A stretch of 64,000 nt of DNA, taken from Dendrobates tinctorius (taxonomy: Eukaryota). The notes beneath the pieces were generated by a model. That model had not been told where the DNA came from, did not search any database, and saw only the letters and a program-made list of their open reading frames with translations. This document shows, piece by piece, positions 12,201 to 60,122 of this stretch (position 1 is the stretch's first letter; every line of letters begins with the position of its first letter). The stretch spans positions 23,002,001-23,066,000 of the forward strand of contig NW_027361878.1 in assembly GCF_039654945.1 (NCBI RefSeq), given 5' to 3'. The position numbers and the translations under genes were made by a program.

Positions 12201-12445
12201 CGCTGTTTCCTGGGTAATTGTTTTCTGCCCCAACCAATCATAGCTCTGAGCTCCAGGAAGCGCCGCCCATCAGTCCTGTCTATACGTCCCACGTGACATA
12301 GAAACAGCCGGTAACCATAATAACGCGGGAGGTGTCGGAATGCAGACAGTTAATAGCGAGGTCATGTGACCAGACTGGAGGAAGGAGAGAAAAGGGAGAT
12401 GGGGCAGTGTGACCTGAAGAGAGGAGACAGCATAGGAGGAGAGAG

Positions 12446-31436: not shown

Positions 31437-34400
31437 TAAATTCTTTTTTTTTGTAAATTCAAAAAAACAATAAAAATACACATATTTAGTATCGCCGAGT
31501 CCGAAACAACCCGCCCTATAAAACTGTCCCACTAGTTAACCCCTTTAGTGAACTCCTTCAAGAAAAAAAAACCAAGGCAAAAAACAAATGCTTTATCATC
31601 ATACCGCCGAACAAAAAGTGCAATAACGCGCGATCAAAAAGACGTATATAAATAAACATGGTACCTCTGAAAACGTCATCTTGTCCCGCAAAAAACGAGC
31701 TGTGATACAGCATCATCAGCATAAAACAAAAAAAGTTATAGCTCGCAGAATAAAGCGATGAAAAAATAATTATTTTTTATATAAAATTGTTTTTATTGTA
31801 TAAAAGCGCCAAAACATAAAAAATGATATAAATGAGGTATCGCTGTAACCGTACTGACCCGAAGAATAAAACTGCTTTATCAATTTTACCGCACACGGAA
31901 CGGTATAAAAGCCCCTCCCAAAAGAAATTCATGAAACGCTGGTTTTTGTTCATTCTGCGCCCCAAAAATCAGAATAAAATCAATCAAAAATGTCACGTGC
32001 CCGAAAATGGTACCAATAAAAACGTCATCTCGTCCCGCAAAAAATAAGACCTCACATGACTCTGTGGGTCAAAATCTGTAAAAATTATAGCTCTCAAAAT
32101 ATGGTGATGCAAAAACTATTTTTACAATAAAAAGCGTCTTTTAGCCTATGACAGCTGCCAAACATAAAAACCACCATAAATAGTAACTCAAACCCCCCGT
32201 TATCACCCCCTTAGTTAGGGAAAAATAATAAAATTTAAAAAATGAATTTATTTTCATTTTCCCGTTAGGGTTAGGGTTAGGGATGAGATTAGGGTTAGGG
32301 GTGTGTTGGGGTTAGGGTTGGAGTTAGAATTGAGGGATTTCCACTGTTTAGGCACAGCAGGGGCTCTCCAAATGCAACATGGCGTCTGATCTCAATTCCA
32401 GCCAATTCTATGTTGAAAAAGTGCTCCTTCCCTTCCAAGCTCTGCCACGCGCCCAAACTGTGGTTTACCCCCACATATGGGGTATCAGCGTACTCAGGAC
32501 AAATTGTACAACAACTGTTGGGGTCCAATTTCTCCTGTTACCCTTAGGAAAATAAAAAAATTGGGGGCAAAAATATCATTTTTGTGGAAAAAAATATGAT
32601 TTTGTTAATCTTTATGGCTCTATGTTGTAAACTTCTGTGATGCACTTGGGGGTTCAAAGTGGTCACCACACATGTAGATAAGTTCCTTGAGGGGGTCTAG
32701 TTTCCAAAATGAGGTCACTTATGGGGGGTTTCCACTGTTCTGGCACATCAGGGGCTCTCCAAACACGACATGGCGCCTGTGGAAACTGTTTGGGTAAGAA
32801 TACAAGGACAGAACAATGGAAAGGACACCATTGTAGGCATTTACTACAGGCCGCCTGTGCAAGCTGAAGATATGGATGAACTCTTTATGCATCAAATGGC
32901 CAAGTTCTCCAAAAAATATGACATAGTTGTCATGGGAGATTTCAGCTATCCAGACATTTGTTGGGAATCTCTCTCGGGCAAAACTAACAGGTCAAGGAAA
33001 TTCTTATCCTCTCTTGCTGACAACTTTATCTTCCAAAAGGTAAGGGAGAAAACAAGGGGAACTGCTACCTTGGATCTAATCCTTATAAACAGGGAGGAAA
33101 TGGTTGAGGAGGTAAAAGTGGCTGGGACCCTAGGAGGTAGCGACCATGCTATTTTAGAATTTTGGATAACTAGAGGAGGAAGACCTGTGAAGACTCAGAC
33201 GTCAAGGTTAGATTTCAGAAAGGCAGATTTTAAGGGATTCAGAAAGAGAATTGGAGGGATCCAATGGCTGGATATCCTTAAAGACAAAAATGTCCAGGAA
33301 GGATGGGAAATCTTGAAAAATGAAATTCTCAAAGCACAATTGTTAACAATTCCGACAAGAGGGAAGAATAGGAAGCATTTAAGGAAACCAGCATGGATGA
33401 ACACAGAACTTAAGCACATGCTAAAAAGGAAGAAAAAATGTTTATAAAATGGAAAGAGGGAGGCATATCTAAAGAAGAATATAATGCTGTCTGCAGAGCC
33501 TGCAGGGCACAAATCAGATTATTAAAGCTGACAATGAATTGAGGCTTGCAAGAGATGTCAAAAGCAATAATAAAGAATTTTGGGGATATGTCAAAAGTAA
33601 AAGAAAAGTCAAAGATGCTATAGGATTTTTACAGGATGAAAATGATGAAATGGTAAGACAGGATGTTGAGAAGGCCGAACTTTTAAATTCCTATTTTGCA
33701 TCTGTTTTCTCTCAGAAAGGAAATGTAACATCAATTGTTCTTCACTGTCCTATTAATGGAATAGAAGAATCCAGGATATCTATAAAGAGAAAGATAGTGA
33801 GGAAACACTTAGCTAACCTAAATGAATTCAAGTCTCCAGGTCCAGATGAATTACACCCCAGAGTTCTGAAGGAGATAGCAGAAGAAATTTTTGAACCCCT
33901 CCCCTCTCCATAATCTTTGAAAATTCTTGGAGAACAGGAGAAGTCCCAGAAGACTGGAGAAGAGCAAATGTTGTTCCTATCTTCAAAAAGGGGAAGAAGG
34001 TGGACCCAGGCAACTATAGGCCGGTGAGTCTGACTTCTATACCAGGAAAGATCTTTGAACAAATTATTAAACAACATGTATGTCAGTACCTGGATAAGAA
34101 TGAAGTGATTAAACAGAGTCAGCATGGGTTTGTAACTAATAAGTCATGTCAGACTAACTTAATTTCCTTCTATGATGGAATCACTGATTGGGTGGATCAA
34201 GGAAATGCTGTAGATATAGTATATCTTGACTTCAGCAAAGCATTTGACAAAGTATCTCATATAATCCTTATTGAAAAAATGACTAAGTATGGAATGGGCA
34301 AGGCAACTGTTAGGTGGATTCACAACTGGCTTAGTGATCGGACCCAAAGAGTGATCGTAAACAGCTGCACATCCTGTTGGAAGAATGTCTCAAGTGGGGC

Positions 34401-35820
34401 ACCACAGGGCTCTGTCCTGGGCCCTGTATTGTTCAACATCTTTATAAATGATTTAGATGAAGGAATTGAGGGTAAACTGATTAAATTTGCTGATGACACA
34501 AAGCTAGGAGGGATAGCTAATACTAGAGAAGAGAGAGAGAAGATTCAAAAAGATATAAATAAACTGGAGAAGTGGGCAGCAACTAACAGAATGGTTTTTA
34601 ACAGGGAAAAATGCAAAGTACTACATCTGGGCAATAAAAATGAAAAAAGCATATACAGAATGGGAGGAATAGGGCTAAGCAACAGCACATGTGAAAAAGA
34701 CTTGGGTATACTAATAGATCACAGACTGAATATGAGTCAACAGTGTGATGCAGCAGCAAAAAAGGCAAATGCAATTCTAGGATGTATTAACAGAAGCATA
34801 CAGTCTAGATCACGTGAAGTCATTATTTCCCTCTACTCCTCTTTGGTCAGACCTCATCTGGAATATTGTGTCCAGTTTCGGGCTCCACATTTTAAAAAAG
34901 ACATCAACAAACTGGAGCAAGTTCAGAAAAGAGCGACCAGAATGGTGACCGGTCTGCAAACCCTGTCTTATGAGGAAAGGTTGCAGGATTTGGAAATGTT
35001 TAGTTTGCAAAAGAGAAGACTGAGAGGAGACTTAATAGCTGTCTACAAATATCTAAAGGGCTGTCATAATGTAGAAGGATCAACTATATTCTCATTTGCA
35101 CAAGGAAAGACTAGAAGCAATGGGATGAAACTGAATGGGAGGAGACACAGATTAGATATTAGAAAAAACTTTTTGACAGAGTGATCAATGAGTGGAACAA
35201 GCTGCCACGAGAAGTGGTGAGTTCTCCTTCAATGGAAGTCTTCAAACAGAGGCTGGACAGACATCTGACTGGGATGATTTAGCGAATCCTGCTTTGAGCA
35301 GGGGGTTGGACCAGATGGCCCAGGAGGTCCCTTCCAACTCTATGATTCTATGATTCTATCTCAATTCCAGACAATTTTGCATCAAACGGCGTGCCTTCCC
35401 TTCCGAGCTCTGCCATGCACCCAAACAGTGGTTTACCCCCACATATGGGGTATCAGCATGCTCAAAACAAATTGCACAATAACTTTTGGGGTCCTGTTTC
35501 CCTTGGGAAAATAAAAATTGGGGGTGAAAAGATCATTTTTTTGGAAAAAATATCATTTTTTAATTGTACGGCTGTACGTTATAAACTTCTGTGAAGCCCT
35601 TGGGGGTTCAATGTTCTCACCCCCTATCTAGATAAGTTCCTTGGGGGGGTCTAGTTTCCAAAATGGTGTCACTTGTGGGGGGTTTCCACTGTTTAGGTAC
35701 ATCAGGGGCTCTCCAAACGTGACATGGCGTCCGATCTCAATTCCAGTTAATTTTGCATTGAAAAAGTCAAACGGCGCTCCTTCACTTCTGAGCTCTGCCA
35801 TGCGCCGAAACAGCGGTTTT
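31437..35820. mobile_element. Second, partial copy of the telomere-repeat/satellite-bearing piggyBac-derived family, interrupted by CR1
   Basis: 32190-32340 matches 6287-6500 (ccccccg.ttatcaccccc..ttagggttaggg); ~390-bp satellite units at 32340-32777 and 35360-35820. Confidence 0.7.
32778..35359 (+). mobile_element. 5'-truncated CR1 LINE; ORF2 (APE endonuclease + RT) broken by frameshifts
   Basis: ORFs 32770-33447 (VVMGDF.YPDICW, GSDH), 33539-33913 (KSPGPDELHPRVLKE) and 34000-35184 ([31 protein letters not shown]); 3' tail (ATTCTATG)n. Confidence 0.95.
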
Positions 35821-36583: not shown

Positions 36584-37771
36584 TGTGGTGCCCCTGAGGG
36601 TTCAGTCGCCACAGAGGTACTGCACCTCAGCCAGAGGTGTGGTATCCCACTATCCAGGTAAGATGGAGACACCTGACCACGCTCAGACACCTGCATCCCA
36701 CACACACTTAGAACAGCAGGGCACCCTATATGACCCCTGCTTGGTTCATGAAGGGTGTTGAGAGTTGGGTGGAGCTTAGGTTTAGAGCGGGAGAGCTGTA
36801 GGAAGTTAGGACAGTTCCCCTTAGGGGGAGGAAGTGAGAGGATGTGTCTGCAGCAGCTCCTAGTCAGGAGGAGCTGCTGGACGGAGTGGACTTTGGAATG
36901 ACGTTCCCTGGAGGGGAAAGGGGTTCTCCCAGAGGCACGGGTGGAGAGTGCTGCACGTGGGGCTCGTTCCACGCTGACGGACGTTAGGTGGGGAGAATCC
37001 AGGTCACAGAAGGGTCTCAGCCCCTAGCCTGGTGGAGTGAACATCAGGACTCAGCTAGAAAGACAATAGCTGTAGCAACTTTAGGGGCCACAACCAACTA
37101 TCACAGTTATCTTCTCCGGAAAGGCCGCCAGCAAGGATCAAGGAAACGTAGTGGGTCACGTTGTCTGACAGGATCCGCAGCAGCTGGCCTGGGACACTGA
37201 CTGTGAGGTGCTGGATTGGAAGGAAAGTGGAAAGCAGCACTGTGGAGATGGCCAGGAAAAGCACATATTGAAGGGAGTGCTGGAAAGGTGTACTTCATCT
37301 GCCTGAGAGTTGACTGAGCCCCTCACCTGAAGAACAAAGTACCAAGCGAGCATCTGTGCGCACCAGAAACTGTGAGTAAAGCTTTGGAACTGCACCCCAC
37401 TGTGTTCTTTGAATTCTTGTGTCAACACTCACCCAGCACTGCTACATCTAACATCAGCAACTATTGCATCTTTAACCAATTACCACTGCCCTGGGACAAC
37501 ACCTCTGCCTGTGGAGAGCTATTCCAGGACAGCTGCAATACACCATCAGTCCCAGAGGATCTGCACTGCAGCGCTGGTCCCTATTGATCAGATACCACAG
37601 GTGGTGTCACGAACTCTTTCCAAAAACTCTTTATTTTTCATTCCCCTGTAAATACACCCCTTTTACTGGACGCCCAGGGCCACGGACCGGGTCACCGCCG
37701 CTGTGACACTGCCCCTTTATGAAGCGGCCTGGCACTGAGTACCCCATTGCCCTGCCCTGGTGGGCAATCTA
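36584..37771 (+). mobile_element. Solo LTR related to the LTRs of the 51224-56231 element
   Basis: Starts tgtggtgcccctgagggttcagtcgccacagaggtactgcacc (near-identical to that LTR's 5' end); shares gtaaagctttggaactgca and cccagggccacggaccgggtcaccgccgctgtgaca; 4-bp TSD tatt. Confidence 0.85.
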
Positions 37772-40740: not shown

Positions 40741-41664
40741 AACACCTGACACCATCAATGTAACATTGTTTTCTCTTTGGCTATGAAAACCATTAGAGCT
40801 CATACTCACTTGCGAGAGACTCGCACTATTCTCGTGCGAGTCTCTCGCATGAAAACCTGGCACTGCCGCCAGCACTCGGACCGGACCGGAGAGTGCAGCT
40901 GCATAGAAATACATGTAGCCGCACGCTCCGGTCCGAGCGCCAACGGCAGTGCCAGGTTTTCATGCGAGAGACTCTACATGAACAGAATGTTAAAGGGGGT
41001 TGTACGGACAGAGGATATTGATACACAAATCAGTATCAGATCAGTGGGGGTCCGACACCTGGTATCCGGACCCCCCTTATCAACTGCTTTTGGCTCAGGA
41101 GGCCTTCGGATGTTAATACATGAACCAGAGCTGCAAAACGCATCTCCACTCTCTGTGTAGCACTCGCTGCTGGGTACTTCAGAACAACTCCTGCAAAAAG
41201 CAGCTAGGTGGGTGCAATGGGTGTTCAACCCTTAACAATCCGATATTGATGATGTATCCTATGGATAAGGCCCCAGAGAGAATCAACACATGGTTACTGG
41301 CTTGTACTGCTTCTAGTACTGTGCATGGCCCGACGATCCTGTCTCTTCTTCACACATCAGGTTGTCGCTACAACCAGAGCACTCTGATGTCATCTACACC
41401 CGGCACAGGCAGCAGAGTGCCCCCTGTGTATTCAGGTAGTTGGTGTTCCTGCTGCTCCACTAAACCACTACCACAAACTCGACTGTACTATACTAGTCAT
41501 CCTGGTTTCAGCACTGCAACATTGAGCCTCCTTGTCTAGCTGTACTGTTATGTGGATGCAGATGTGCTACATCAAGTGCCAATCTAAAACTCTACTGCTC
41601 AAGAGCTCAGACACTGCTGCTCTACTACTTCACAAATCTATCTCTGTTCTCTGTTATCGTAGTC

Positions 41665-42640
41665 ATTGCTGATCCAGCTCTGCAACACCAGTCACCTCTG
41701 ATCCAGCTCTGCTATACCAGCTATCCCTGATCCAGCTATGCTACACCGGTCCACGCTGATCCAGCTCTGCTACACCGGTCCATGCTGATCCAGCTCTGCT
41801 ACACCGGTCCACACTGATCCAGCTTTGTTACACCAGTCATCACTTATCCAGCTCTGCTACACCGGTCCACAATGATCCAGCATTGTTACACCAGTCATCA
41901 CTGACCGACCTCTGCTACACCGGTCCACACTGATCCAGCTTTGTTACACCAGTCATCACTGATCCAGCTCTGCTACACCGGTCCACAATGATCCAGCTTT
42001 GTTACACCAGTCATCACTGATCCAGCTCTGCAACACCGGTCCACACTGATCCAGCTTTGTTACACCAGTCATCACTGATCCAGCTCTGCTACACCGGTCC
42101 ACAATGATCCAGCTTTGTTAAACCAGTCATCACTGATCCAGCTCTGCTACACCGGTCCACAATGATCCAGCTTTGTTACACCAGTCATCACTGATCCAGC
42201 TCTGCTACACCAGTCACCCCTGATCCAACTGTGCTACACCGGTCCACGCTGATTCAGCTCTGCTACACCAGTTCATGCTGATCCAGCTCTGCTACACCAG
42301 TCATTGCTGATTCAGCTCTGCTACACCAGTCATTCCCGATCCAGCTTTGCTACACTTGTCCACGCTGAACCTGCTCTGCTACACCAGTCATGGTTGATCC
42401 AGCTCTGGTAAACCATTCATTGCTGTTCCAGCTTTGATATACCAGTCCATGCTGATCCAGCTGTGCTACACCGGTCCACACTGATCTAGCTCTGCTAGAT
42501 CTGTCCACGTTGATCCTGTTCTGCTACACCGGTCCATGCTGATCCACCTCCTCTACACTGGTCCACACTGATTTAACACTGTTACACTAGTCATTGATGA
42601 TCCAGCTCTGCTACACCAGCCATCTCTAATTCAGCTCTCC
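41665..42640. repeat. 29-bp minisatellite with a 58-bp higher-order alternation in its core
   Basis: ctgatccagctctgctacaccggtccaca alternates with (c/a)tgatccagctttgttacaccagtcatca. Confidence 0.9.
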
Positions 42641-42937
42641 TACTTCCGTTTGGCATGGAAATAGAATATTCTGCAGAATACTACGTCAATATTATTTTGA
42701 GATCTTGACTTTGTAAAAGATTAGATGTCGTTTTGATGTAATTTTTACTGCGCCTGAAATGGAAATTCATTTATTATTGTTATAATTAATTTATTAACAA
42801 CCATCAACAACAATAATTATACACGATGATGATGATGATGATGATTATGGTAATAATGTTTCCTATTGCTCTTTGTCCTTTCTCTGGTGGCTTGTGCACT
42901 CCAAATCATTATTGGTTGTAAGACTTTAAAAAAATCC

Positions 42938-44360: not shown

Positions 44361-44559
44361 NNNNNNNNNNNNNNNNNNNNNNNNNNNNNNNNNNNNNNNN
44401 NNNNNNNNNNNNNNNNNNNNNNNNNNNNNNNNNNNNNNNNNNNNNNNNNNNNNNNNNNNNNNNNNNNNNNNNNNNNNNNNNNNNNNNNNNNNNNNNNNNN
44501 NNNNNNNNNNNNNNNNNNNNNNNNNNNNNNNNNNNNNNNNNNNNNNNNNNNNNNNNNNN
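44361..44559. other. Assembly gap (N run)
   Basis: ~200 N. Confidence 1.
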
Positions 44560-47311: not shown

Positions 47312-50300
47312 TGTCATGATCCAAGGTGGATCTGACAAGTAAATGGACAAAGTGAACTTTTTTCCCTTTGGCTTGGTGCCAAAGTGGGTTGATTGCCCCT
47401 GGTGGCCATTAGAATTAGTACACGTGGTGTCGCTCCTTCTAAGTTGCCCCGGTGGTGGTGAGCGGTAGTGCACTTTAGTTTCTTTGGTTTAATGTGCACT
47501 TAATTATAAATCAGGTGTGAGGCTCTATAAAAGAGAGCCAGGTGTGTTCAATGATTTTTGGTGATATTGTGAGTTAGTCATTCTCAAGGAAGCCTTGGTG
47601 AAAGAAGGAGCTGAATGAGAGTCCTGGGCAGCCCAGCCAGAGGGGACGAGTGGCAGCTATGGAGTCTGCATGGAGGGCTGGCATGGTGTGGTGGAGTCGC
47701 AGTTTATGGTGTCAGCAGGAGGTGCTTGCATGGCTTGGTGGAGTGGCAACGATGGTGAGAGTTGCACTCAGCATGCTGGACTTGGTTGCTGAAAACTGGA
47801 CTCACGCATGCTGGACTTTTTGGCAGAAGCTGGACTCATCTTTGGGACTCTGTTTACTGGGCAGCTGCAACTGGTGGTGGACTCTGCTCCAAGGCTGCAC
47901 TATGGTGATGGATCCGGTTATGGTGATAGATCTGGGTGGAGGAGAAGATGCACACAGGTGGTGGGCTCTGTTGCTAGGAGCGTACGCAACAGAGCAAAGC
48001 TAAGTGGTGTTCCCCCTGTATTGTCATTTTCCCTTGTGTGTGTTTAGTGCAGTGGTGGGATTAGTTTCCGCACCGACCAATTCCCTAGTGAGGGTTTAGG
48101 GTCAAGGCGAGTCAGGGTTTTAAGGTTCCTGTGCGTCGCCCGGTGCAGAAGCGGCATAGGGAACATTAGGAGTGCAGGGATTCTGGCTCAGGGGAGTGCA
48201 GGAGGTCTCCACTTCCCTATTCCCTATTGCAGGGCCTACCATTGTTAATGTTACCCAGGTTCCCCTTTATTATTTAAATTCGCCTTACTGGAAGCGGGGT
48301 TTCCAGACTATTGTATAAATACGTGTAATACCTAAATTCGCCAGTTGGAGGCGGTGTATCTAGCTGCACGTCTTATTATTTAAATTTGCCCAACTGGAGG
48401 CGGTGTATTCAGGGTCACGTGTGTCATATGGGTTCGCCTTGTGGTACTCGCTGCGTCCAGACACACATGACTGTGACATTATCACCAACCCTACTTTTTT
48501 TTTTCTGGTTAGCCTTGGCCATGTGGAGACCACTGAGTAATTGCTGCCGGGCCTCACTGAGGTGAGTGAGGAGCGACATGGTGTGTTAGAGCCGCTGCAG
48601 CAGTATTTATCAGGGTCTGGGGCCTTCCCTTTGGCTTCAACCAGAAAATCAAATGGCGGCTGTGGTCTGGCAAAAAGCCCCTAGTGTCGCTGCTGGGGAG
48701 CAGGACTTGCTCATGCATGCGGAGGTACCCAGGCAGGTGGGAAGAGTTGGTGCCCCACGGAGCTGCCTGGTATTCCCCGAGGTGAAGGGGTACATCCCTG
48801 TGGTGAGCAGACTGGTGTATAGTCCGCGGGGCTCACGCCAAATCTTCCATACCATAGAAGAGGCCGCCCCCTCCTGGTCGTGTGGCGGCAACCAGAGAGT
48901 GTATTTTTCCTCCATATTCCTGTCCCCTTCTCCTCCAGGTGTGAGCCGCAGGTGTGCTGCGGAGGAGTAGGGACAAATCTCACCCCTCGCCATTATCAAC
49001 CCTGGGAGGCGCAGACCTCATGGTGAAAGGGTTGGAGGGTGGTGTCCCTTGGTGAATAGCGGGTGTGTGAGTGTGGTGACACAGGGGGACGCCTCTGTTG
49101 TTGAGTCCAGAATGAGTTCACCAAAATATGACAAACGAATGTGTGGCAATAAACGTTCAGGTCCGGACCTGTGTGTGAACGAGCATGTATGGGTGGCCAC
49201 CAAAAAACATCTTGTGGAAGTGTGTTGTGGAGTCTGATCAGCTCATAGCAAACATACACATACATAAACTTATTCCACAGGTTGGCGCTGTGGAGATGAG
49301 TGGTGCCTCCAGAACATGTATTGCCAATACCAGCTGTGCGTTTGTCATAAACCTGAAGTTTCAGGTGGTGGTGGGGTGAACCCAGGATCTGGGCGTCCCC
49401 GTTGTAGGTGTTTCCCTTATGAGGAGTAGTCTTGAGGGTCCAGAGGCCCCTCATTAAGGAAGGGGTACTGTCATGATCCAAGGTGGATCTGACAAGTAAA
49501 TGGACAAAGTAAACTTTTTTTTCCTTTGGCTTGGTGCCAAAGTGGGTTGATTGCCCCCGGTGGCCATTAGAATTATTACACGCGGTGTCGTTCATTCTAA
49601 GATGCCCCGGTGGTGGTGAGCGGTAGTGCACTTTAGTTTCTTTGGTTTAATGTGCACTTAATTATAAATCAGGTGTGAGGCTCTATATAAGAGAGCCAGG
49701 TGTGTTCAATGATTTTTGGTGATATTGTGAGTTAGTCATTCTCAAGGAAGCCTGGGTGAAAGAAGGAGCTGAATGAGAGTCCTGGGCAGCCCAGCCAGAG
49801 GGGTTGAGTCAGCTATGGAGTCTGCATGGAGGGCTGGCATGGCGTGGTGGAGTCGCAGTTTATGGTGTCAGCAGGAGGTGCTTGCATGGCTTGGTGGAGT
49901 GGCGACGATGGTGAGAGTTGCACTCAGCATGCTAGACTTGGTTGCTGAAAACTGGACTCAAGCATGCTGGACTTTTTGGCAGAAGCTGGACTCATCTTTG
50001 GGACTCTGTTTACTGGGCAGCTGCAACTGGTGGTGGACTCTGCTCCAAGGCTGCACTATGGTGATGGATCCAGTTATGGTGATGGATCCAGGTGGAGGAG
50101 AAGATGCACGCAGGTGGTGGGCTCTGTTGCTAGGAGTGTACGCAACAGAGCAAAGCTAAGTGGTGTTCCCCCTGTATTGTCATTTTCCCTTGTGTGTGTT
50201 TAGTGCAGTGGTGGGATTAGTTTCCGCACCAACCAATTCCCTAGAGAGGGTTTAGCGTCAGGGCGAGTCGGGGTTTTAAGATTCCTGTGCGTCGCCCGGT

Positions 50301-50634
50301 ACGGAACGGGCATAGGGAACGTTAGGAGTGCAGGGACTCTGGCTCAGGGGAGTGCAGGAGGTCTCCACGTCCCTATTCCCTATTGCAGGGCCCACCATTG
50401 TTAATGTTACCCAGGTTCCCCTTTATTATTTACATTTGCCTTACTGGAAGCGGGGTTTCCAGACTATTGTATAAATACGTGTAATACCTAAATTCGCCAG
50501 TTGGAGGCGGTGTATCCAGCTGCACGTCTTATTATTTAAATTCGCCCAACTGGAGGCGGTGTATCCAGGGTCACGTGTGTCATATGGGTTCGCCTTGCAG
50601 TACTCGCTGCGTCCAGACACACGTGACCATGACA
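47312..50634 (+). mobile_element. Non-autonomous LTR retroelement: LTRs 47312-48478 and 49469-50634, ~1-kb internal region without a recognisable gag/pol ORF
   Basis: TGTCA...TGACA on both LTRs, 5-bp TSD tcatt, PPT aaggaagggg just before the 3' LTR, TATA box at 47526. Confidence 0.92.
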
Positions 50635-53277
50635 TCATTGCTAAGGAGGTGCTGGAGAGCCGCACTTATTTCTGCAGCACAATGACACGCTGCAGATCTT
50701 AAACCCGGAGCCCTTGTCAGCTGATGCTATGGATAATCATGTGCTGGAGATTCCGTAAACTCTTGTACATTTTCCTGACACTGTGAAACGCAGTAGGTTT
50801 TCCGCAAGTGAATATGTATAGCACAGAATCTGCTGCGTTTTCGCTACATGGAAGCACAACATTAGATTTGCTACTAACGTGTGTTTTTCAGTATTTTATG
50901 TATAGTTTATTCCCACGGGGAAGGATAATAGCAGCTTTTTTTTCTGCTTTATTATGAGCCCCGGGAACAAAGGATTTTATTTTACGCTAAACCCAAATAA
51001 TATCTTAACTATTATTATTGTGCAGTGATTACGGTCCGCTGCTTCCTGCTATCAGCCAGTCTGGGAGGTGAGGACTGCTGGGTTTATTTGCATTTTCAAT
51101 AGTTTTCTAGTTTTCATAGTTTTTTTATGTTGAAGGTAGACATAAGTCCATCAAGTTCAAATTCCTCATGAGATGGATACTAACTGCCCCATAATAGAGG
51201 AAAAATTCCTTCCCAAATCCACATGGGTCGCCCTCCCAGGGCTGTGGGGTACTCGGTACCGGGCCGGTCTCTCAGATGGGAATGTCACAGCAGCGGCGAC
51301 CCGGTCCGTGGCCCTGGGCGCCCAAGTAAAAAGGGAGATTGAACGGTGCAATGTAGTTGAAATGAATAGTTTGTGACGCCACCTGTGGTGTTCGGCAAGG
51401 GAGGTGTTAAGCCGACGCTGCATGCAGATCCTCTTGGACTGATGGTATGGCGCAGCAAAGATGTTATAGCTCCCCACAGGTGGAGCTGTAGTCCCAGGGC
51501 AGTGTACATGTAGAGGCCAAGGGAAGGCGTAGGTGAGGCAATGTCGAGCACCAAGATGTAGCAGTGCCGGGTGTGTTGGCGCAGGAATAAGTAGAGGACA
51601 CCAGAGCATGCAGTTCCAAAGCTTTACTCACAGTCTGTTGTACAAACAGGTGCCTGCCTCCGTGCCGTGTCCTCCGGGTCAGGGACTCAGTCAACCTCCA
51701 GGCCAGATGGAATACACCTTTCCAACACTCCGCCAACATGTGCCTTTCTGAACGTCTCCTCTTATAGCGGCTTTAGATGAAGTACTCCTAGTACTGAGTT
51801 ACACTGGAGTTCCTCCTGTCCGATGTTCCTCTGAACTCTACTTGTACGGCAGACAGTTGTAGCCTGCTTCGGGGACTCCTTGCTACTAAGTTCCGGCTCA
51901 CTATCCAGTTGCTGTTGTGCCCCCAAGTCTTGTGTGGGAATAAAGTGGTCGCTACTTGTATTCCTCTGGTGTCTGCTGCAGGACCATTAGTATCCATACA
52001 ACCTCGGGGACCGGGCCCCGGCCTTGCGCTTAGAACTTCTAGGAAGGGTTCTCCTCTAACCCACGTCCTCTGTTATCTTTAACTCTTCACGTTCCGTACT
52101 AATCCTTTCTTTCTATGGAGAATCAGGCTTTCAGTCTATGTTGCTCTCTCTCTTCCTTTCCCGTGCCAGCAGACCCAGGTCACTGGGATCTGCTGCAGCA
52201 CTTCCATCCATCTATCCCTCTCTCCGGGGATCTTCTCTCCTGCTCTCTAATCAACTGACTTCCAATCCTAAACTCTTCCCGCTCTTTGTAATGTAAACTA
52301 ACTCCACCCACCTCCCAGCACGTTTCGTGTTCCAAGCAGGGAGCCACCAATGGGTGTTTTGCTACACTCCAAGCAGGGAGCCGCAGAAGGTGCTGTGCTA
52401 CACTACTTTGTGGTGTGGGGAGCAGGTGTTGGAGCGTGGTTGGGAGTTTCCACCTTACCTGGATGGTGGGATAACACACCTCAGGAGGAGGTGCAGTACC
52501 TCTGTGGCGAATGAGCCTAAGGGGCGCCACATACCCCCCGTTAAACACAACACGTCCGCGGGCTGCAAGGCAAACAAAGTTGACAATACAGGAACATACA
52601 AAAATTTTTATATTGCATAATAAGCATGTCTTATACTAAACTTCCCAATGTGGGAGGCACTGTTTCTTGAATGTTACAAACCAGTTAACTGTCTATCTAT
52701 ATTTAAAGTTATGCTACCTAATCCAAAGTGCTATAGGAACAGATTCACTATCACTCGAGCAACACATTTGCTAGTGACACATTTCTTCTCCGTTTACCTT
52801 TCACATTTTGATTTAACTCTCACATCTTTATTCAAACTCTGTAACACAGTCACTGTATTTCTTTCTCTATTAGACCCTATAAAATCTGTCATTAATACTT
52901 TCACTACACACTATCATTGCCTAGCTTCTTATTCAAAAAATATTAAGCATTATGAATAAGTGCAAAGAGTAGACACTGGTCCGGCCATTATGTCTTGAAA
53001 TGTCCTTGTTCCGAGGTAGTACTTGTTCATGGGAAGGTTCCTATGTAAAACCAAGAGAGAGCACCTAAAGAGGTGCAAACTATTTACATTTACAGTTCTG
53101 GATCACTCAGCGTCCATGATCTCCACAGTTCAAGTGCAAAGGCTGCCAATGGAACTAGGCAACAACTGGATCAACAGATAACATAATCAAAAATAGAAGG
53201 ATCTTAGAAAAACTGAGAAAACTGGCACAATGGTGCAAATACCCTCCTGGGCAACAAAGTTAGTTTACTGTAAATTA

Positions 53278-54842
53278 TTAGTGGTGATCCCCTCCTGGGG
53301 TGAAAAACGAGTTGGCAGACCACAGGTACTTCTCCTCCCAAAGGGTGAAATTGGTGACCTCTTGTACTTTCGGCTGCGGGACTGGTACTGATGCAGCTTG
53401 GCTTATGGGGGCAGATACTCGCACAGCTTTGGTGATGGCTGTGGGTGGAGGAGTAGCAGGTTGCTTCTGCCGGTAACTCTCGATGAAATCCTCCGGGATA
53501 CAGTGTATATTTAGGGCATACCACCCCCTTAGCCCCTCATGCCGGGTGAAAGTCACGTAATCCCCTGGGTGTAGGTTCCGGCAGGGTGTCCCTTTTTCAG
53601 ATGGGACTCCACGCCTCTCCGGTTAAAGAACAGATCGGAGATAAACCCGAACCCCCGCTCATGGTTCGCATTGAGAACCTGGCCCCATCCTGCCGAATCC
53701 CGGGGACCATAATGACCAGCACAGGTTTTTTCTTTGCAGCCTAGGTCAGGGCCCAGCACAGACAACCTTGTCTGTTCCATCTCCCGCTGCTCGGCTGCCA
53801 GTTGTCGGATGGTCTCCTGGCAGTGGGCCTTCGTCACTTCCTCCTCTTCCCGGGACTGATCTCTGCCCACCCTAGCCCGTGGTACTATGGTTAGGGGTTC
53901 CGGTGTTCCCCCGGGGGACTTGTATCCCGGTCCCAGACCAAATCTAGCACGACCTGGCCAGCCGCTGCGACCACGGTACACCCCAAGGTCTTCCCAGGTG
54001 CAGGGACGCCAGACGTACCTGGAGCCTCCTGGCGGCACTCCGGTGCAGGTCGGAGGTAGCCGGCGGCAGCGGGGATATCCAACGGGATGGGCCGGTGAGG
54101 CGGCAGAGGCGCCGGCGGAGCAGATGGCGTCTCCAGGTCCACGGGGGGTCTCCGGTGGGATCTGCCCAGCTGCGTCATGTCCAGGCGGGAGCTTCTCTTC
54201 CTCCGCTTCGGCTCCCTTGGCACCATGGAGCGGCAGGGAGATGCCCACAGACGCTGCCGGGGTCATTGCAGCCATTTCAGGTGCTACAGGGTCTTCCTGG
54301 GGGAGATCCGGTGCAGCGGTGACAGGTACCGGTGTTGCGGGTACCGCAGGTGCAGGCCCCTCCTGGGCGCGCTGCCGGTTCAGTGTCCATAACGCTTCCT
54401 GCCTCAGTCGCAGGCGGCACGTCAGCTGGGCTATCTCGTCCTCCAGCTGTTGGCGGTTCATCCTGGAAGCCGGGTCAGAGCCTTCAGCCATGGCGCCGGG
54501 GAGATTCAGCTCAACCTCCTCGCTCTCCGCAGGCCTCTTCCCTTCTCCTTCCAATATGGCGTTCTGGCGTTCTTCTTCCTGCCTGAGCTCTTTTCCGGCC
54601 ACTGGCCTCTGCTCCTCCTTCTGGGGGCGGCATCTTCTTCCAACTGCTCCATAGCAGGCCAGTATATGAACCCCTCGGGGGGTGGGCCATGTTGCTGTCG
54701 CATAGAAGTTCAGACAGGGGAGGCCCAGGACAGTTTGCGGTCTTTTCTTAGGACCACCCATGCTGTCACGCCCTTCTTCACCGTGCCAGCAGCCATTTTT
54801 AGCGTTCATTTTACAGTCTATTAAATTGGGTCTTCTGCACAT
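53278..54842 (-). pseudogene. Element-encoded ORF (~520 aa once one frameshift is repaired): coiled-coil and Pro/Ala-rich N-terminus, C-terminal cold-shock-like domain
   Basis: ORF 53553-54848 joins ORF 53278-53556 via a 1-nt shift near 53582; the joined sequence GQVLNANHERGFGFISDLFFNRRGVESHLKKGHP-RNLHPGDYVTFTRHEGLRGWYALNI follows the CSD pattern. Confidence 0.7.
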
Positions 54843-54896
54843 TTTCAAAAACTTTGAGTCTTAGGCACACAGAACCCGATGGCATCGGGTCTCGTC

Positions 54897-54914
54897 ATCC
54901 TGTTCGTGACGCCA
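54897..54914 (-). promoter_or_regulatory. Primer-binding site for tRNA-Ser(CGA)
   Basis: TGGCGTCACGAACAGGAT, 4 nt after the 5' LTR; complementary to the 3' end ATCCTGTTCGTGACGCCA of vertebrate tRNA-Ser(CGA), as recalled. Confidence 0.85.
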
Positions 54915-56387
54915 AAATTGGGTCGCCCTCCCAGGGCTGTGGGGTACTCGGTACCGGGCCGGTCTCTCAGATGGGAATGTCACAGCAGCGGTGACCCGGT
55001 CCGTGGCCCTGGGCGCCCAAGTAAAAAGGGAGATTGAATGGTGCAATGTAGTTGAAATGAATAGTTTGTGACGCCACCTGTCGTGTTCGGCAAGGGAGGT
55101 GTTAAGCCGACGCTGCATGCAGATCCTCTGGGACTGATGGTATGGTGCAGCAAAGATGTTATAGCTCCCCACAGGTGGCGCTGTAGTCCCAGGGCAGTGT
55201 AGATGTAGAGGCCAAGGGAAGGCGTAGGTGAGGCAATGTCGAGCACCAAGATGTAGCAGTGCCGGGTGTGTTGGCGCAGGAATAAGTAGAGGACACCAGA
55301 ACATGCAGTTCCAAAGCTTTACTCACAGTCTGTTGTACAAACAGGTGCCTGCCTCCGTGCCGTGTCCTCCGGGTCAGGGACTCAGTCAACCTCCAGGCCA
55401 GATGGAATACTCCTTTCCAACACTCCGCCAACATGTGCCTTTCTGAACGTCTCCTCTTATAGCGCCTTTAGATGAAGTACTCCTGAGTTACACTGGAGTT
55501 CCTCCTGTCTGATGTTCCTATGAACTCTACTTGTACGGCAGACAGCTGTAGCCTGCTTCGGGGACTCCTTGCTACTAAGTCCCGGCTCACTATCCAGTTG
55601 CTGTTGTGCCCCCAAGTCTTGTGTGGGAATAAAGTGGTCACTACTTCTATTCCTCCGGTGTCTGCTGCAGGACCATTAGTATCCATACAACCTCGGGGAC
55701 CGGGCCACGGCCTTGCGCTTAGAACTTCTAGGAAGGGTTCTCCCATAACCCACGTCCTCTGTTATCTTTTACTCCTCACGTTCCGTACTAATCCTTTCTT
55801 TCTATGGAGAATCAGGCATTCAGTCTATGTTGCTCTCTCTCTTCCTTTCCCGTGCCAGCAGACCCAGGTCACTGGGATCTGCTGCAGCACTTCCATCCAT
55901 CTATCCCTCTCTCTGGGGATCTTCTTCTCTCCAGCTCTCTAATCAACTGACTTCCAATCCTAAACTCTTCCCGCTCTTTGTAATGTAAACAAACTCCACC
56001 CACCTCCCAGCACGTTTCGTGTTCCAAGCAGGCAAGCAGGGAGCCACCAATGGGTGCTTTGCTACACTCCAAGCAGGGAGCCGCCGAAGGTGCTTTGCTA
56101 CACTACTTTGTGGTGTGGGATGCAGGTGTTGGAGCGTGGTCAGGAGTCTCCACCTTACCTGGATGATGGGAAACCACACCTCAGGAGGAGGTGCAGTACC
56201 TCTGTGGCGACTGAGCCTCAGGGGCGCTACACACATATAGCAAATGCACCAGTTCCCGGGATCAATGCAACATCACAAAATCTAGTGTCCATAACCTGTG
56301 TTATTATATTTATCAAGGTAGGTATCCAAGCCCTTCTTGTAATTTTTTAGTGAATTAATCATTACAACAACATGTGGCGGAGCGTTC

Positions 56388-57642
56388 TATAGTCTTACTG
56401 CTCTTACAGTAAAGAATCCATATTCTTACTGCTCTTACAGTAAAGAATCCATAGTCTTACTGCGCTTACAGTAAAGTATCCATAGTCTTACTGCTCTTAG
56501 GCTAGTTTCGCATTTGCATACCTTGGAGCTGTGGAGGGATGCAGACGTCCTCCGAGAAGCTCAGCCCACGGCTGCACCTCCTCCGGTCAGCTCCTCCGTC
56601 GGCATGCGGCTGCATGCAGCCTGCGTACCCTATCTTTAGCATTCGGTACGCAGGCCGTGCCGCAGTATGCGGATGCCGCTGCATGCGTCGTTTTGACGGT
56701 GCGGTGACTGCACCAAAATGCAACATGTTGTGTTCGACGCAGGTCACCGCACCGTCAAAATGACGCATGTGGCGGCATCTGCATACTGCGGCACCGAGCT
56801 GACCAGAGGAGGTGCAGCTGTGGGCGGAGCTTCACAGAGGGCATTTGTATCCCTCCGCAGCTCCAAGGTACGCAAATGTGAAACTAGCCTCAGAGTAAGG
56901 AATCCATAGTCTTACCGCTCTTACAGTAAGGAATCCATAGTCTTACTGCTCTTACAGTAAAGAATCCATAGTTCTTCTACTCTTGCAATAAAGAATCCAT
57001 AGGTTTACTGCTCTTACAGTATACAATCCATGGTCTTACTGCTTTTACAGTAAAGAATCCATAGTCTTATTGCTCTTACAGTATAGAATCCATAGCTTTA
57101 CTGCTTACAGTAAAGCATTCATAGTCTTACTGCTCTTACAGTAAATAATTCATAGTCTTACTGCTCTTACAGTATAGAATCCATAGCTTTACTGCTTTTA
57201 CAGTAAAGAATTCATAGTCTTACTGCTCTTACAGTAAATAATTCAGAGTCTTACTGCTCTTACAGTATATAATCCATGGTCTTACTGCTCTTACAGTAAA
57301 TAATCCATAGTCTAACTGCTCTTACAGTAAAGAATCCATAGTCTTACTGCTCTTACAGTATAGAATCCATAGCTTTACTGCTTACAGTAAAGCATTCACA
57401 GTCTTACTGCTCTTACAGTAAATAATTCATAGTCTTACTGCTCTTACAGTATAGAATCCATAGCTTTACTGCTTTTACAGTAAAGAATTCATAGTCTTAC
57501 TGCTCTTACAGTAAATAATTCATAGTCTTACTGCTCTTACAGTAAAGAATTCATAGTCTTACTGCTCTTACAGTATATAATCCATGGTCTTACTGCTCTT
57601 ACAGTAAAGAATCCATAGCTTTACTGCTTACAGTAAAGAATC
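56388..57642. repeat. 31-bp minisatellite (~28 copies) derived from CR1 ORF2
   Basis: Unit catagtcttactgctcttacagtaaagaatc; its reverse complement encodes FFTVRAVRLW. Confidence 0.92.
56500..56889. mobile_element. Palindromic Harbinger-like MITE inside the minisatellite
   Basis: ggctagtttcgcatttgc / gcaaatgtgaaactagcc; tta/tca flanks. Confidence 0.85.
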
Positions 57643-60122
57643 ACTTTCTGTAATTATGATTAAACCATTTTCCTCTAGAAGTAGAGGATACCCCCTCACT
57701 GTCAAAGGCCTAGGTGTAAAAAAAATGATTATACAGATCTCTGTACTGTCCATTCATAAATTTGTACATTATAATAAGATCGCCCCTAAGCCTTTGCTTT
57801 CCCAAACTGAATAACCCCAAGTTTGATAACCTGTCTTGGTATTGCAGACCCCCCATTTCCTTTATAACATTGGTTGCTCTTCTCTGCACCCTCTCTAGCT
57901 CAGCCGTGTCCTTCTTATACACCAGTGACCAAAATTGTACGCAGTATCTAAGTGTGGCCGCACTAGTGACTTTTACAGAGGCCAAACTATGTTCTCGTCA
58001 TGAGCATCTAGGCCTCTTTTAATGCATCCCATTATTTTACTTGCCTTGGCAGCAGCCGCCTGACACTGATCACTAAAGTTGAGTTTGCCGTCCACTACGC
58101 CCACGTTTTTTTTACCCAGCATTTTACAATTTAGTACATAATTAGGGCTTGTGTAAATCAACGTTTAAATCGGACGAACGCTATCCATGGTTTTAACAGA
58201 TAGCACTCGTCGTACCCATGCTATTATATGGGGTTGTGCACATGTTTGATCTTTTTCCTCGGACCTCTCAGGCTAAAGAAAATCAGCAACGCAAGTCTAT
58301 GGGTCCGTGGAAAACATCGGACGGCACTCAGATGACATCCGAGTGCAGTCAGATTTTCACAGGCTGACATAATGGAGAAGGTGGAGAAACTCTAGTTTTC
58401 TCTCCACCTCTGATTAAACTCTGGTCAGAGTCTCATCAGTACCGTTTTTCTCGACGGACTTTTGTGCGACCCTACCCTTATACATAATATACTGACGAAA
58501 AGCCCAGAACTTAAGTATTATATTATCTAAGTACCAAGAATTTTTTTTCTATAAGTTGCGCTTTTGTAAGATTTCTACAACACGTTTAATATCCCTTTAA
58601 GAAAAACGTCCAATTGCAACATTTCACCAGGACCACACTGCGTAAATTGGCCACAACACACATTGATCCACTGAGCAGTGACCGCAGCACTGGCAGCATG
58701 AAGCTGATTCCACTGCAGCGCTAAGGCTGACGCCTCTCAGGGTTTTTGGCTGCCCATCCATCCCGTGAAGGGGTTAAGTAGCGAGGTTAAGTGGCAGGCA
58801 GAACTTGGCATGATCTCCATTGACTGTCATCCTCATTTAATGTGCGCTGGCCGGAGATTTCGAAGACACATTAACTGTTTCATGGCTAGAAATGGGTCAG
58901 CAGAGTGGGAGGGGTTAAGTGACACTGCAGGTCTGTGACAGTAAAGGAGCTTTAAGGAAGCTCCCCTGCATTTTGGCAAGCAGGGTGGGGTGATCATTAT
59001 GCAACGCTGCGTGGTGCTAGCAGGCAAGTGGCTGATGCTCTGCAGTCTATATGTTGTATAATGAGCTATCTGGCTTGGAAGGAAAGGGTTAAAGGATCCT
59101 AAGTTTTGCCATGAGACACTGCTGTATAAATGCATGGCTGGCAGACAGAGGGTAACTGCGGCTCCTGCCGGCGCAGAAGGGTTATTATAGTCAGGGGTCC
59201 GCAGGGAGTCAGATGATTATTATTATCGTCCTATAATCTCATTAGGTAGAATGCGAAGAATTGCACTTTAGTTTAGCGTGGCTCTTACGTGATGGAAGGG
59301 TTAATCAATTGCCTTCTCTACAAGTACAGGGTAAGCGAAGATCTTCAAGATCGGTAAGAAACGTTTGCTGGGCATTGGCGAAAAAATGGTTAATTGTGGC
59401 CATTGCATTATCTTGTTGCAGGTCCCCTGGTGGAGCAGGATCATCCCCCCTTAGGTCCTGTACACATTCTGCTTCTTTTTCCATCTCCTCCGCTCGCTTA
59501 TCGCAAATCTTTCTAGTCTCGAGCTTTATCTTCTTCCCCTTCTGTCTCAATGTCTACATCTTATTTCATCCTCTCACTCCCTCTTTTCCACGCCCATGCA
59601 GTGTGTGGATAGGAGGGAGTTCTCAGTGTGGGTATCACTGTCCTCCGGGCATCGGATACAAGAGGATGGGCTGCAGGCCCTGCTGCAGGGGGCTCCTACC
59701 TGCCTGAGTGTGCAGGTGTGTGACTGTCACATCATCCGATATTGGAGATCGCTGGCAGACGGCTCCGACACCTGCCCTCCTGGTAAGTGACACCAGCCGC
59801 TCTGCACTCACTTCTGACATCTCCGCTTCCTTATATATGTCCCGATGAATATATAGGTAGTCGGATATCAGTCATATATCTGTATAGGTTAAGAACTAAC
59901 CAATACACAATAAAAAAATGGAAAAATGTACAGGTGAAATAGAAATAACCAATATACATATGTACGGTATCTATCTATCTAGACATTTAATATACACATA
60001 AATAACCAACATACAATATAAACATACACAGGAGTAAAATAAAATACATAAATACACAAAATAAATAAATCTAAACATAAATAACCAACAAATGATATAA
60101 ACATATGCAACTGTAATATATA

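What the first reader, a model, noticed from the sequence alone, without database searches (positions are those of the whole stretch)
53278..54842. LTR retroelement whose only gene encodes a cold-shock-domain (CSD)-like RNA-binding protein instead of gag/pol
Seen in sequence: a structurally complete LTR element (two 1.3-kb LTRs, CACA TSD, tRNA-Ser PBS, PPT) has a ~2.4-kb interior with one long ORF starting ~55 nt after the PBS, where gag normally sits. There are no RT, RNase H, integrase, protease or CCHC motifs. Repairing a 1-nt frameshift at ~53582 (cac cct gc|cgg aac cta) gives, at 53684-53506, GQVLNAN-HERGFGFIS-DLFFN-RRGVESHLKKGHP-RNLHPGDYVTFT-RHEGLRGWYALNI. Established knowledge: the CSD pattern in CspA/YBX1/LIN28/CSDE1 is G.VKWFN..KGFGFI (RNP1) ... 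DVFVH (RNP2) ... L.EG..VEF....G.KG..A.NV, and all five strands line up in order. Upstream are a coiled-coil-like segment (RMNRQQLEDEIAQLTCRLRLRQEAL) and a Pro/Ala-rich linker. Inference: this may be a family of non-autonomous retroelements that keeps its own nucleic-acid chaperone, either substituting for nucleocapsid in tRNA annealing, dimerisation or packaging, or mimicking amphibian oocyte Y-box mRNA masking. I know of no described LTR lineage defined by a CSD cargo.
Basis: partly seen in the sequence, partly recalled or inferred. Interest (0 to 1): 0.9.

Follow-up and report, generated by a model that had tools for sequence, protein, structure and literature searches.

The report
Pol-less LTR element with cold-shock-like ORF
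A dead, 5-kb LTR retroelement that has all the signals for reverse transcription but no gag or pol carries one long orphan gene whose tail looks, modestly but beyond chance, like a cold-shock nucleic-acid-binding domain; only this single copy could be examined, so a "family" and a function remain unproven.

Summary
The element lies on the minus strand. Its LTRs are at 54919-56231 (5') and 51224-52531 (3'), TG..CA ended, with K2P distance 0.031. A 4-bp CACA duplication flanks it. A TGG-initiated PBS-like site lies 4 nt after the 5' LTR and a G-rich PPT abuts the 3' LTR. The interior is 2387 nt.

The only long ORF is 431 codons plus about 92 more in another frame. The frame break falls inside a CSD-like segment (53506-53684).

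Read through with X, that segment hits Pfam CSD PF00313 at E=2e-5. The score is 24.8 bits, just under the 27-bit cut-off, and covers profile positions 3-64 of 66. A window-wide control with frameshift-joined peptides gave 17.8 bits here, 5.7 at the next locus, and at most 12.3 in 31 null windows. An AlphaFold model guided by a shallow alignment is a five-strand barrel; the single-sequence model was uninformative.

No other frame of the interior has a Pfam hit, so no gag, pol or zinc knuckle was found. The rest of the ORF is orphan: 0 hits among 1.84 billion representatives. No second copy could be found, so family, selection and partner are untested. The host looks like a squamate reptile, not an amphibian.

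Verdict: a non-autonomous LTR element with an unusual CSD-like cargo ORF. It is interesting, but rests on one decayed copy.

The parts
56232..56235 (.). target-site duplication CACA (5' side of the minus-strand element)
   Evidence: read from sequence
54919..56231 (-). 5' LTR, 1313 nt, TGT...CCA
54897..54914 (-). PBS-like site starting TGGCG, 4 nt after the LTR; tRNA identity not established
   Evidence: flank print-out
54874..54890 (-). 8+8 nt perfect palindrome in the leader between the PBS and the ORF start; role unknown
53553..54848 (-). ORF piece A, 431 codons (first ATG at 54842). G/P/A/R/E-rich, with no Pfam, PDB or database relatives
54360..54464 (-). charged helix-prone segment with a roughly 4-heptad hydrophobic pattern (ORF A residues about 129-163)
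   Evidence: composition; heptad pattern read by eye, no coiled-coil predictor run
53889..54368 (-). Pro/Ala/Gly-rich low-complexity region (ORF A residues about 161-320; P+A+G 40-55%)
53754..53858 (-). second charged, helix-prone segment just upstream of the CSD-like domain
53506..53684 (-). cold-shock-domain-like segment, split by the frame break
   Evidence: Pfam PF00313 E=2e-5, 24.8 bits, profile 3-64 of 66. Best PDB match CspLA, E=0.006, 21 of 59 identical without gaps. 40% and 35% identity in the alignment to two bacterial CSDs. Null control. Model and fold search
53576..53609 (-). interval in which the reading frame changes (between strands 3 and 4 of the domain). It contains short homopolymer runs, so an assembly indel cannot be excluded
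53278..53601 (-). ORF piece B (second frame): CSD strands 4-5 plus a Pro-rich C-terminal tail, ending in the stop at 53278
52543..53277 (-). AT-rich non-coding 3' part of the interior
52532..52542 (-). polypurine-tract-like AACGGGGGGTA next to the 3' LTR
51224..52531 (-). 3' LTR, 1308 nt
51220..51223 (.). target-site duplication CACA (3' side)
36585..37771 (+). solo LTR of a related subfamily (70-88% identity in the matched pieces) with its own 4-bp duplication TATT

Best explanation
This is an old, inactive copy of a non-autonomous LTR retroelement. It keeps every cis signal needed for reverse transcription and integration: LTRs, a PBS-like site, a PPT, and a 4-bp duplication from integration. 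It encodes no protease, reverse transcriptase, RNase H or integrase, so it must have been copied by the enzymes of an autonomous relative.

In the position where gag normally sits it carries one gene of about 520 codons. The product is mostly low-complexity (Gly/Pro/Ala/Arg/Glu-rich). It has two short charged helices and, near the C-terminus, a divergent cold-shock-type OB fold.

The most likely role (inferred, not shown) is an element-encoded single-stranded nucleic-acid binder or chaperone. It would coat or mark the element's own RNA and help it into the partner's particles. That is the job done by the nucleocapsid part of Gag, or by the coiled-coil plus RNA-binding ORF1 protein of L1.

In this copy the gene is broken by one frame change inside the domain.
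For: Shown, element anatomy.

Shown, no pol or gag: no Pfam domain in any frame of the interior other than the CSD-like segment.

Shown, the ORF is real:
- It is longer than any of 1000 shuffles.
- It has codon periodicity that the flanking non-coding parts lack.
- One frame break and no in-frame stop is what neutral decay predicts, given 3% LTR divergence and 3 indels per 1.3 kb of LTR pair. This implies the ORF was open when the copy inserted.

Shown, CSD resemblance:
- Pfam E=2e-5 over the whole domain.
- NCBIfam CspE, CspC and CspD models.
- 21 of 59 identities to Listeria CspLA without gaps.
- 40% and 35% identity in the alignment to two bacterial CSDs that share HERGFGFI.
- It is the top locus by 12 bits in a window-wide scan of 14730 frameshift-joined peptides, and above all 31 null windows.
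- The alignment-guided AlphaFold model has pLDDT 82 with five strands in CSD order. Its best PDB matches are all CSDs at TM 0.7-0.8.

Shown, the LTR type is a repeat family: a related solo LTR with its own duplication lies at 36585-37771.
Against: - The Pfam score is below the curated cut-off (24.8 against 27).
- The single-sequence model was poor (pLDDT 49) and put helices where strands 1-3 should be.
- The good model leaned on an alignment of three genuine CSDs.
- Several nucleic-acid-contacting aromatics are missing. Strand 1 reads VLNAN where Csp has VKWFN. The RNP2 histidine is N, or the motif is absent, depending on the alignment.
- Only one copy of the interior was available, so conservation, intact copies, expression and a partner element are all untested.
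- The ORF has no relatives at all. That fits a lineage-restricted gene, but it also fits a non-functional one.
Confidence: 0.5

Rival explanations
1. The CSD resemblance is genuine homology, but the ORF is a passenger. A piece of a cellular or foreign gene was picked up by the element (transduction or template switching) and carried along, with no role in the element's replication.
For: Non-autonomous LTR elements often carry unrelated inserts. The Ala/Pro/Gly-rich stretch before a CSD loosely recalls the layout of Y-box proteins (plus my own knowledge of YBX1). The CSD binding surface is partly degenerate.
Against: No donor was found. ORF A has 0 relatives among 1.84 billion representatives, a library drawn from the same collection that returned many reptile, bird and turtle proteins. 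The CSD is only about 30% identical to YBX1, YBX2 and LIN28B structures, and no closer to them than to bacterial Csp. A recent capture from a conserved host CSD gene is therefore excluded. The ORF sits exactly in the gag position and was apparently open at insertion.
Confidence: 0.2
2. The CSD resemblance is coincidental. The ORF is a fast-evolving, unrecognisable gag-like or other protein, and the frame join creates the impression of a domain.
For: The score is sub-threshold. Each half alone is insignificant (E about 0.1). The single-sequence fold was not a barrel. One of 31 null windows reached 12.3 bits.
Against: The two halves match consecutive parts of the profile, in order and with the right spacing. 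The joined score is 12 bits above the next locus in the window and 5.5 bits above the best null. HERGFGFI is an exact RNP1 motif shared with real bacterial CSDs, which then align at 35-40% identity over the whole domain.
Confidence: 0.15
3. There is no gene. The GC-rich interior simply has long open frames by chance.
For: The opposite strand also has a 264-codon open stretch. ORF A is compositionally simple.
Against: 431 open codons exceeds all 1000 shuffles, whose maximum was 309. Periodicity is present in the ORF but not in the LTR or the 3' part. The CSD match lies in this frame.
Confidence: 0.05

Closest known systems
Pol-less LTR elements of Xenopus laevis (1a11, xretpos(L), lambda-olt 2-1), as summarised in PMC4585706
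   Same: Vertebrate LTR elements with LTRs and a single ORF. They have no amino-acid similarity to pol and are presumed unable to move on their own.
   Different: 1a11's ORF is reported as Gag-like. No CSD is reported for any of them. Sequence relatedness could not be tested, because no nucleotide collection of vertebrates was available. The host here looks squamate, not amphibian.
Non-autonomous LTR retrotransposons in general (LARD, TRIM, BARE-2, mouse ETn mobilised by MusD) - from established knowledge
   Same: Intact LTRs, PBS and PPT with no polymerase; dependence on a partner's proteins.
   Different: LARDs and TRIMs are defined by a non-coding interior. Here a long ORF occupies two thirds of the interior.
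L1 ORF1p and retroviral/retrotransposon Gag nucleocapsid (nucleic-acid chaperones) - from established knowledge
   Same: An element-encoded protein in the first-gene position. It combines helical (possibly oligomerising) segments with a small single-strand-binding module.
   Different: The module here is CSD-like, not an RRM or CCHC knuckle. No capsid-like domain was detected. No biochemical evidence exists. This is an analogy only.
Cold-shock domain proteins (bacterial CspA/CspB; eukaryotic YBX1-3, LIN28, CSDE1), Pfam PF00313
   Same: Full-length alignment to the domain, an exact RNP1 motif (RGFGFI), five strands in the canonical order in the guided model, and TM 0.7-0.8 to solved CSDs.
   Different: The score is below Pfam's cut-off. 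The strand-1 aromatics and the RNP2 histidine are not kept. The loop between strands 2 and 3 is shortened, or strand 3 is non-canonical. The domain is embedded in an orphan protein inside a retroelement.

Membership tests
LTR retroelement (structural definition) | Two direct long terminal repeats ending TG...CA | tested here: met
   1313 and 1308 nt, 96.9% identical at aligned sites, TGT...CCA
LTR retroelement (structural definition) | Short target-site duplication flanking the LTRs | tested here: met
   CACA on both sides
LTR retroelement (structural definition) | Primer-binding site complementary to a tRNA 3' end next to the 5' LTR | tested here: inconclusive
   TGGCG... starts 4 nt after the LTR. 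No tRNA set was available to name the tRNA, and the window has no tRNA gene.
LTR retroelement (structural definition) | Polypurine tract next to the 3' LTR | tested here: met
   AACGGGGGGTA at 52532-52542
Autonomous LTR retrotransposon / endogenous retrovirus | gag and pol (PR, RT, RNase H, IN) coding capacity | tested here: not met
   No Pfam hit for any such domain in any open stretch of the interior. The interior is only 2387 nt.
Gag / nucleocapsid | Capsid-type domain or CCHC zinc knuckle | tested here: not met
   No Pfam gag family and no CCHC. No PDB sequence match. No relatives. Fold-level similarity of the N-terminal 380 residues was not tested.
Cold-shock domain, Pfam PF00313 | Score at or above the curated gathering cut-off (27 bits) | tested here: not met
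   24.8 bits, E=2e-5, profile 3-64 of 66, with X at the frame break. Each half alone scores E about 0.15 or is not reported.
Cold-shock domain, Pfam PF00313 | RNP1 motif [KR]-G-[FY]-G-F-I on strand 2 | tested here: met
   RGFGFI; HERGFGFI is shared exactly with two bacterial CSDs
Cold-shock domain, Pfam PF00313 | RNP2 motif (V-F-V-H type) on strand 3 and aromatic residues on strand 1 | tested here: inconclusive
   The MAFFT alignment gives DLFFN against DLFFH (His replaced). The HMMER ungapped alignment gives RGVES against VFVHF. Strand 1 reads VLNAN against VKWFN.
Cold-shock domain, Pfam PF00313 | Five-stranded antiparallel beta-barrel (OB fold) | tested here: inconclusive
   The alignment-guided model has pLDDT 81.9 and strands 2-12, 17-20, 23-26, 48-56, 59-67. 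Its top PDB matches are CspA, CspB and YBX1 at TM 0.7-0.8. That alignment consisted of CSDs, and the single-sequence model was pLDDT 49 and not a barrel.
Cold-shock domain, Pfam PF00313 | Binding of single-stranded RNA/DNA | not testable with these tools
   Needs a biochemical assay
LARD/TRIM-type non-autonomous LTR elements | Interior without protein-coding capacity | tested here: not met
   A 431+92-codon ORF fills about 1.57 kb of the 2.39-kb interior

The most novel reading that the evidence does not exclude
A lineage of non-autonomous LTR retroelements, apparently in a squamate reptile, has replaced gag with its own gene for a disordered, helix-bearing protein ending in a cold-shock-type OB fold. 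That protein would act as the element's private RNA chaperone or packaging adaptor while it parasitises an autonomous partner's capsid and polymerase. It would be an ORF1p-like strategy arising inside an LTR element, built on a domain not previously tied to retroelements.
Probability: 0.22. Interest if true: 0.8.

Novelty: new variant of a known kind. Interest (0 to 1): 0.5.

Why it matters
Retroelements are known to use zinc knuckles (Gag NC) or RRM-type folds (L1 ORF1p) to chaperone their RNA. A cold-shock-type fold in that role would be a third, independent solution.

It would also show that a non-autonomous LTR element can keep a gene of its own rather than being a pure cis-acting parasite.

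If further copies prove to be conserved, the element would offer a simple system for asking what a parasite-of-a-parasite must encode for itself. If not, this is one more decayed LTR element with an odd insert.

Tried and rejected
1. Relatives of the ORF: none found by any route.
- Word-indexed search of 5.8 billion proteins with ORF A.
- The same search with the X-joined domain.
- Exhaustive phmmer against 1.84 billion representatives.
- PDB sequences.
- Back-translated scans of metagenome and viral contigs.
- Exact scans for a 27-mer conserved between the two LTR subfamilies.

2. A second copy of the interior in the window: none by tblastn or sensitive blastn.

3. Single-sequence AlphaFold of the domain: low confidence and uninformative.

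4. Rfam over the whole window: nothing, so no ribozyme or known structured RNA. The bacterial-type promoter/terminator scan is irrelevant here.

5. Literature: full-text searches for a cold-shock domain together with LTR retrotransposon/gag or ORF1 found no description of such an element.

6. Rejected, recent capture of a host Y-box, LIN28 or CSDE1 gene: identity is only about 23-30%, and no donor exists for the rest of the ORF.

7. Rejected, amphibian host: the neighbouring CR1-type LINE is closest to squamates.

8. Not human: the window carries CR1 and Tc1-type repeats, and nothing suggested human sequence. The N run at 44361-44559 was left untouched.

Full report
**What is there**

The finding lies inside a 5.0-kb LTR retroelement on the minus strand.
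- The two LTRs are at 54919-56231 (5', 1313 nt) and 51224-52531 (3', 1308 nt). They differ by 40 substitutions and three indel events, K2P 0.031.
- On the sense strand the LTRs begin TGT and end CCA, and are flanked by a 4-bp duplication (CACA on the plus strand).
- Four nucleotides after the 5' LTR comes a TGG-initiated PBS-like site. Directly before the 3' LTR is a G-rich purine tract. These two signals, and the long ORF, all agree on the minus-strand orientation.
- The interior is 2387 nt.
- A solo LTR of a related subfamily, with its own 4-bp duplication (TATT), sits at 36585-37771. The LTR type is therefore a genuine repeat family in this genome.

**The gene**

- One frame is open for 435 codons (ORF 53553-54848, first ATG at 54842). 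Coding then continues in a second frame down to the stop at 53278. The frame change can be placed anywhere in about 53576-53609.
- A 431-codon open frame exceeds all 1000 composition-matched shuffles, whose maximum was 309.
- The ORF has weak but significant codon periodicity (G at 38% in first positions, p=0.004). The LTR and the AT-rich 3' part of the interior do not.
- The LTR pair shows 3% divergence and three indels per 1.3 kb. One frame break and no in-frame stop in about 1.57 kb is therefore what neutral decay of an ORF that was intact at insertion would give (inference).
- The break interval includes short homopolymer runs, so an assembly indel cannot be ruled out.
- No other open stretch of the interior, on either strand, matches any Pfam family. 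The element has no protease, RT, RNase H, integrase, capsid family or CCHC knuckle.

**The protein**

- ORF A is dominated by Gly, Pro, Ala, Arg and Glu.
- It has a charged helix-prone segment with a roughly four-heptad hydrophobic pattern (residues about 129-163). I read that pattern by eye; no coiled-coil predictor was run.
- A Pro/Ala/Gly-rich stretch of about 160 residues follows, then a second charged segment, then the CSD-like segment, then a Pro-rich tail.
- Outside the CSD-like part it is an orphan. It has no hit in Pfam or NCBIfam or among PDB sequences. The word-indexed search of 5.8 billion proteins found nothing, and exhaustive phmmer against 1.84 billion representatives found nothing.
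- The word-indexed collection plainly contains many reptile, turtle and bird transposon-derived proteins, and the representative library is drawn from the same proteins. The blank is therefore informative for annotated proteomes. It says little about unannotated repeats.

**Is the cold-shock resemblance real?**

Sequence evidence:
- Taken separately, the two halves are insignificant. The C-terminal half matches CSD profile positions 38-64 at E=0.15. The N-terminal half matches an S1/CSD-like family at E=0.08.
- Read through with X at the break, the 72-residue peptide matches PF00313 over positions 3-64 of 66 at E=2e-5. The score of 24.8 bits is just below the 27-bit gathering cut-off.
- It also matches the NCBIfam CspE, CspC and CspD models.
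- Its best PDB sequence matches are all bacterial cold-shock proteins. The best is Listeria CspLA, E=0.006, 21 of 59 residues identical without a gap.
- A scan of prokaryotic genomes for its short peptides returned two genuine CSD genes carrying the same HERGFGFI motif. tblastn identity to the peptide is 41% and 37%; in the multiple alignment it is 40% and 35%.

- I generated every stop-free frameshift-joined peptide of the same geometry on both strands of the window (14730 peptides). I scored them against two Csp sequences taken.
- This locus scored 17.8 bits and the next best locus 5.7.
- In the reversed window and 30 locally shuffled windows, the best score averaged 5.9 (sd 1.7) and never exceeded 12.3.
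- The resemblance is therefore beyond chance for this window. By extrapolating the score tail, which is my estimate, the window-wide p is of the order of 1e-4 to 1e-3.

Structure:
- AlphaFold on the single X-joined sequence was uninformative (pLDDT 49).
- With a four-row alignment (the peptide plus three bacterial CSDs) it gave pLDDT 81.9 and pTM 0.68. It had five strands in the canonical order and a low-confidence loop around the break.
- Foldseek returned only CSDs at the top: CspA, CspB, CspE, YBX1, YBX2, LIN28B and UNR, at TM 0.7-0.8.
- This shows compatibility, not independent proof, because the alignment consisted of CSDs.

Departures from a canonical domain:
- RNP1 is perfect.
- The aromatic pair on strand 1 is lost (VLNAN for VKWFN).
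- RNP2 is either DLFFN, with a six-residue deletion of the strand 2-3 loop and a five-residue insertion after strand 3 (MAFFT), or is essentially absent (ungapped HMMER alignment).
- Identity to vertebrate Y-box and LIN28 structures is no higher than to bacterial Csp.
- I conclude that the segment is very probably a diverged CSD-type OB fold (about 0.8). It is not a recent copy of a host CSD gene.

**What could not be done**

- No second copy of the interior exists in the window.
- None of the collections available holds vertebrate repeats.
- The tRNA-Ser assignment of the PBS could not be checked. The window has no tRNA gene. From memory the site matches the Ser 3' end at only about 12 of 18 positions and shares CGAACAGG with the Lys3-type site. 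That is a recollection, not a test.

**Host**

The neighbouring CR1-type LINE (32770-35184) is 81% identical to a Salvator merianae protein. It is about 70% identical to Podarcis and Anolis proteins and about 60% to turtle and bird copies. The window is therefore most likely from a squamate reptile. This removes the basis for the amphibian-oocyte masking idea. Nothing suggested human sequence. The N run at 44361-44559 was left alone.

**Mechanism, most likely**

Shown:
- The cis machinery is complete and pol is absent.
- A real ORF sits in the gag position.
- Its C-terminal part has a CSD-like fold.

Inferred:
- The element was mobilised in trans by an autonomous relative.
- Its protein bound single-stranded nucleic acid, plausibly the element's own RNA. 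It would act as a chaperone or packaging adaptor in the manner of Gag nucleocapsid or L1 ORF1p.

I give this 0.5. The main rival is that the ORF is a captured passenger with no role in replication (0.2). Chance resemblance in an unrecognisable gag-like ORF gets 0.15, and no gene at all 0.05.

**Comparison with the known**

- Pol-less LTR elements with a single ORF are known in vertebrates, for example Xenopus 1a11, xretpos(L) and lambda-olt 2-1 (PMC4585706). Non-autonomous LTR elements in general (LARD, TRIM, ETn) are commonplace.
- What is unusual is the CSD-like module. Three full-text searches found no description of a cold-shock domain encoded by an LTR element or a LINE ORF1.
- I therefore rate it a new variant of a known kind.

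**Limits kept**

The element is a retrovirus-like insertion in an animal genome. I therefore read the broken gene only with X at the break.

Noticed in passing
window 47312-50638: A second small LTR-type element lies directly beside this one. Its LTRs are 47312-48482 and 49469-50638 (1172 nt aligned, 95.7% identical, TG...CA ends). It has a 5-bp duplication TCATT, an interior of only about 986 nt, and a purine run before the second LTR. The 211-codon ORF at 48996-49631(-) has no Pfam hit. Its LTR divergence is similar to that of the CSD element.
   Followed up: partly
window 36585-37771: Solo LTR of a subfamily related to the CSD element's LTR (70-88% identity in the matched pieces), in plus orientation, flanked by TATT on both sides.
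   Followed up: partly
window 56355-57720, interrupted at 56494-56895: A 31-bp satellite array starts about 120 nt from the element's 5' end. It is split by a roughly 400-nt insertion made of nested inverted repeats: 100-nt arms 87% complementary, and inner 52-nt arms 92% complementary. The insertion looks like a hairpin-forming MITE or foldback element.
   Followed up: partly
window 41554-42700: A 29-bp tandem satellite with at least 31 copies.
   Followed up: no
window 12366-14237: A strongly G-rich, C-poor block (962 G against 104 C, GC skew 0.6) built of a roughly 40-nt degenerate tandem unit. It produces a spurious 623-codon open frame with no Pfam hit.
   Followed up: partly
window 32770-35184 and 27160-28173: CR1-type LINE pieces (endonuclease and reverse transcriptase). 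The RT is 81% identical to a Salvator merianae protein and about 70% to Podarcis and Anolis, which points to a squamate host.
   Followed up: partly
window 20956-21486: Tc1/mariner-type transposase N-terminal HTH domains on the minus strand.
   Followed up: no
window 54874-54890: A perfect 8+8 nt palindrome (ACCCGATG / CATCGGGT, one base between) in the leader, between the PBS-like site and the ORF start. It might be a dimerisation or packaging hairpin. Not tested.
   Followed up: no
window 44361-44559: A run of 199 N (assembly gap or masked stretch). Left untouched.
   Followed up: no
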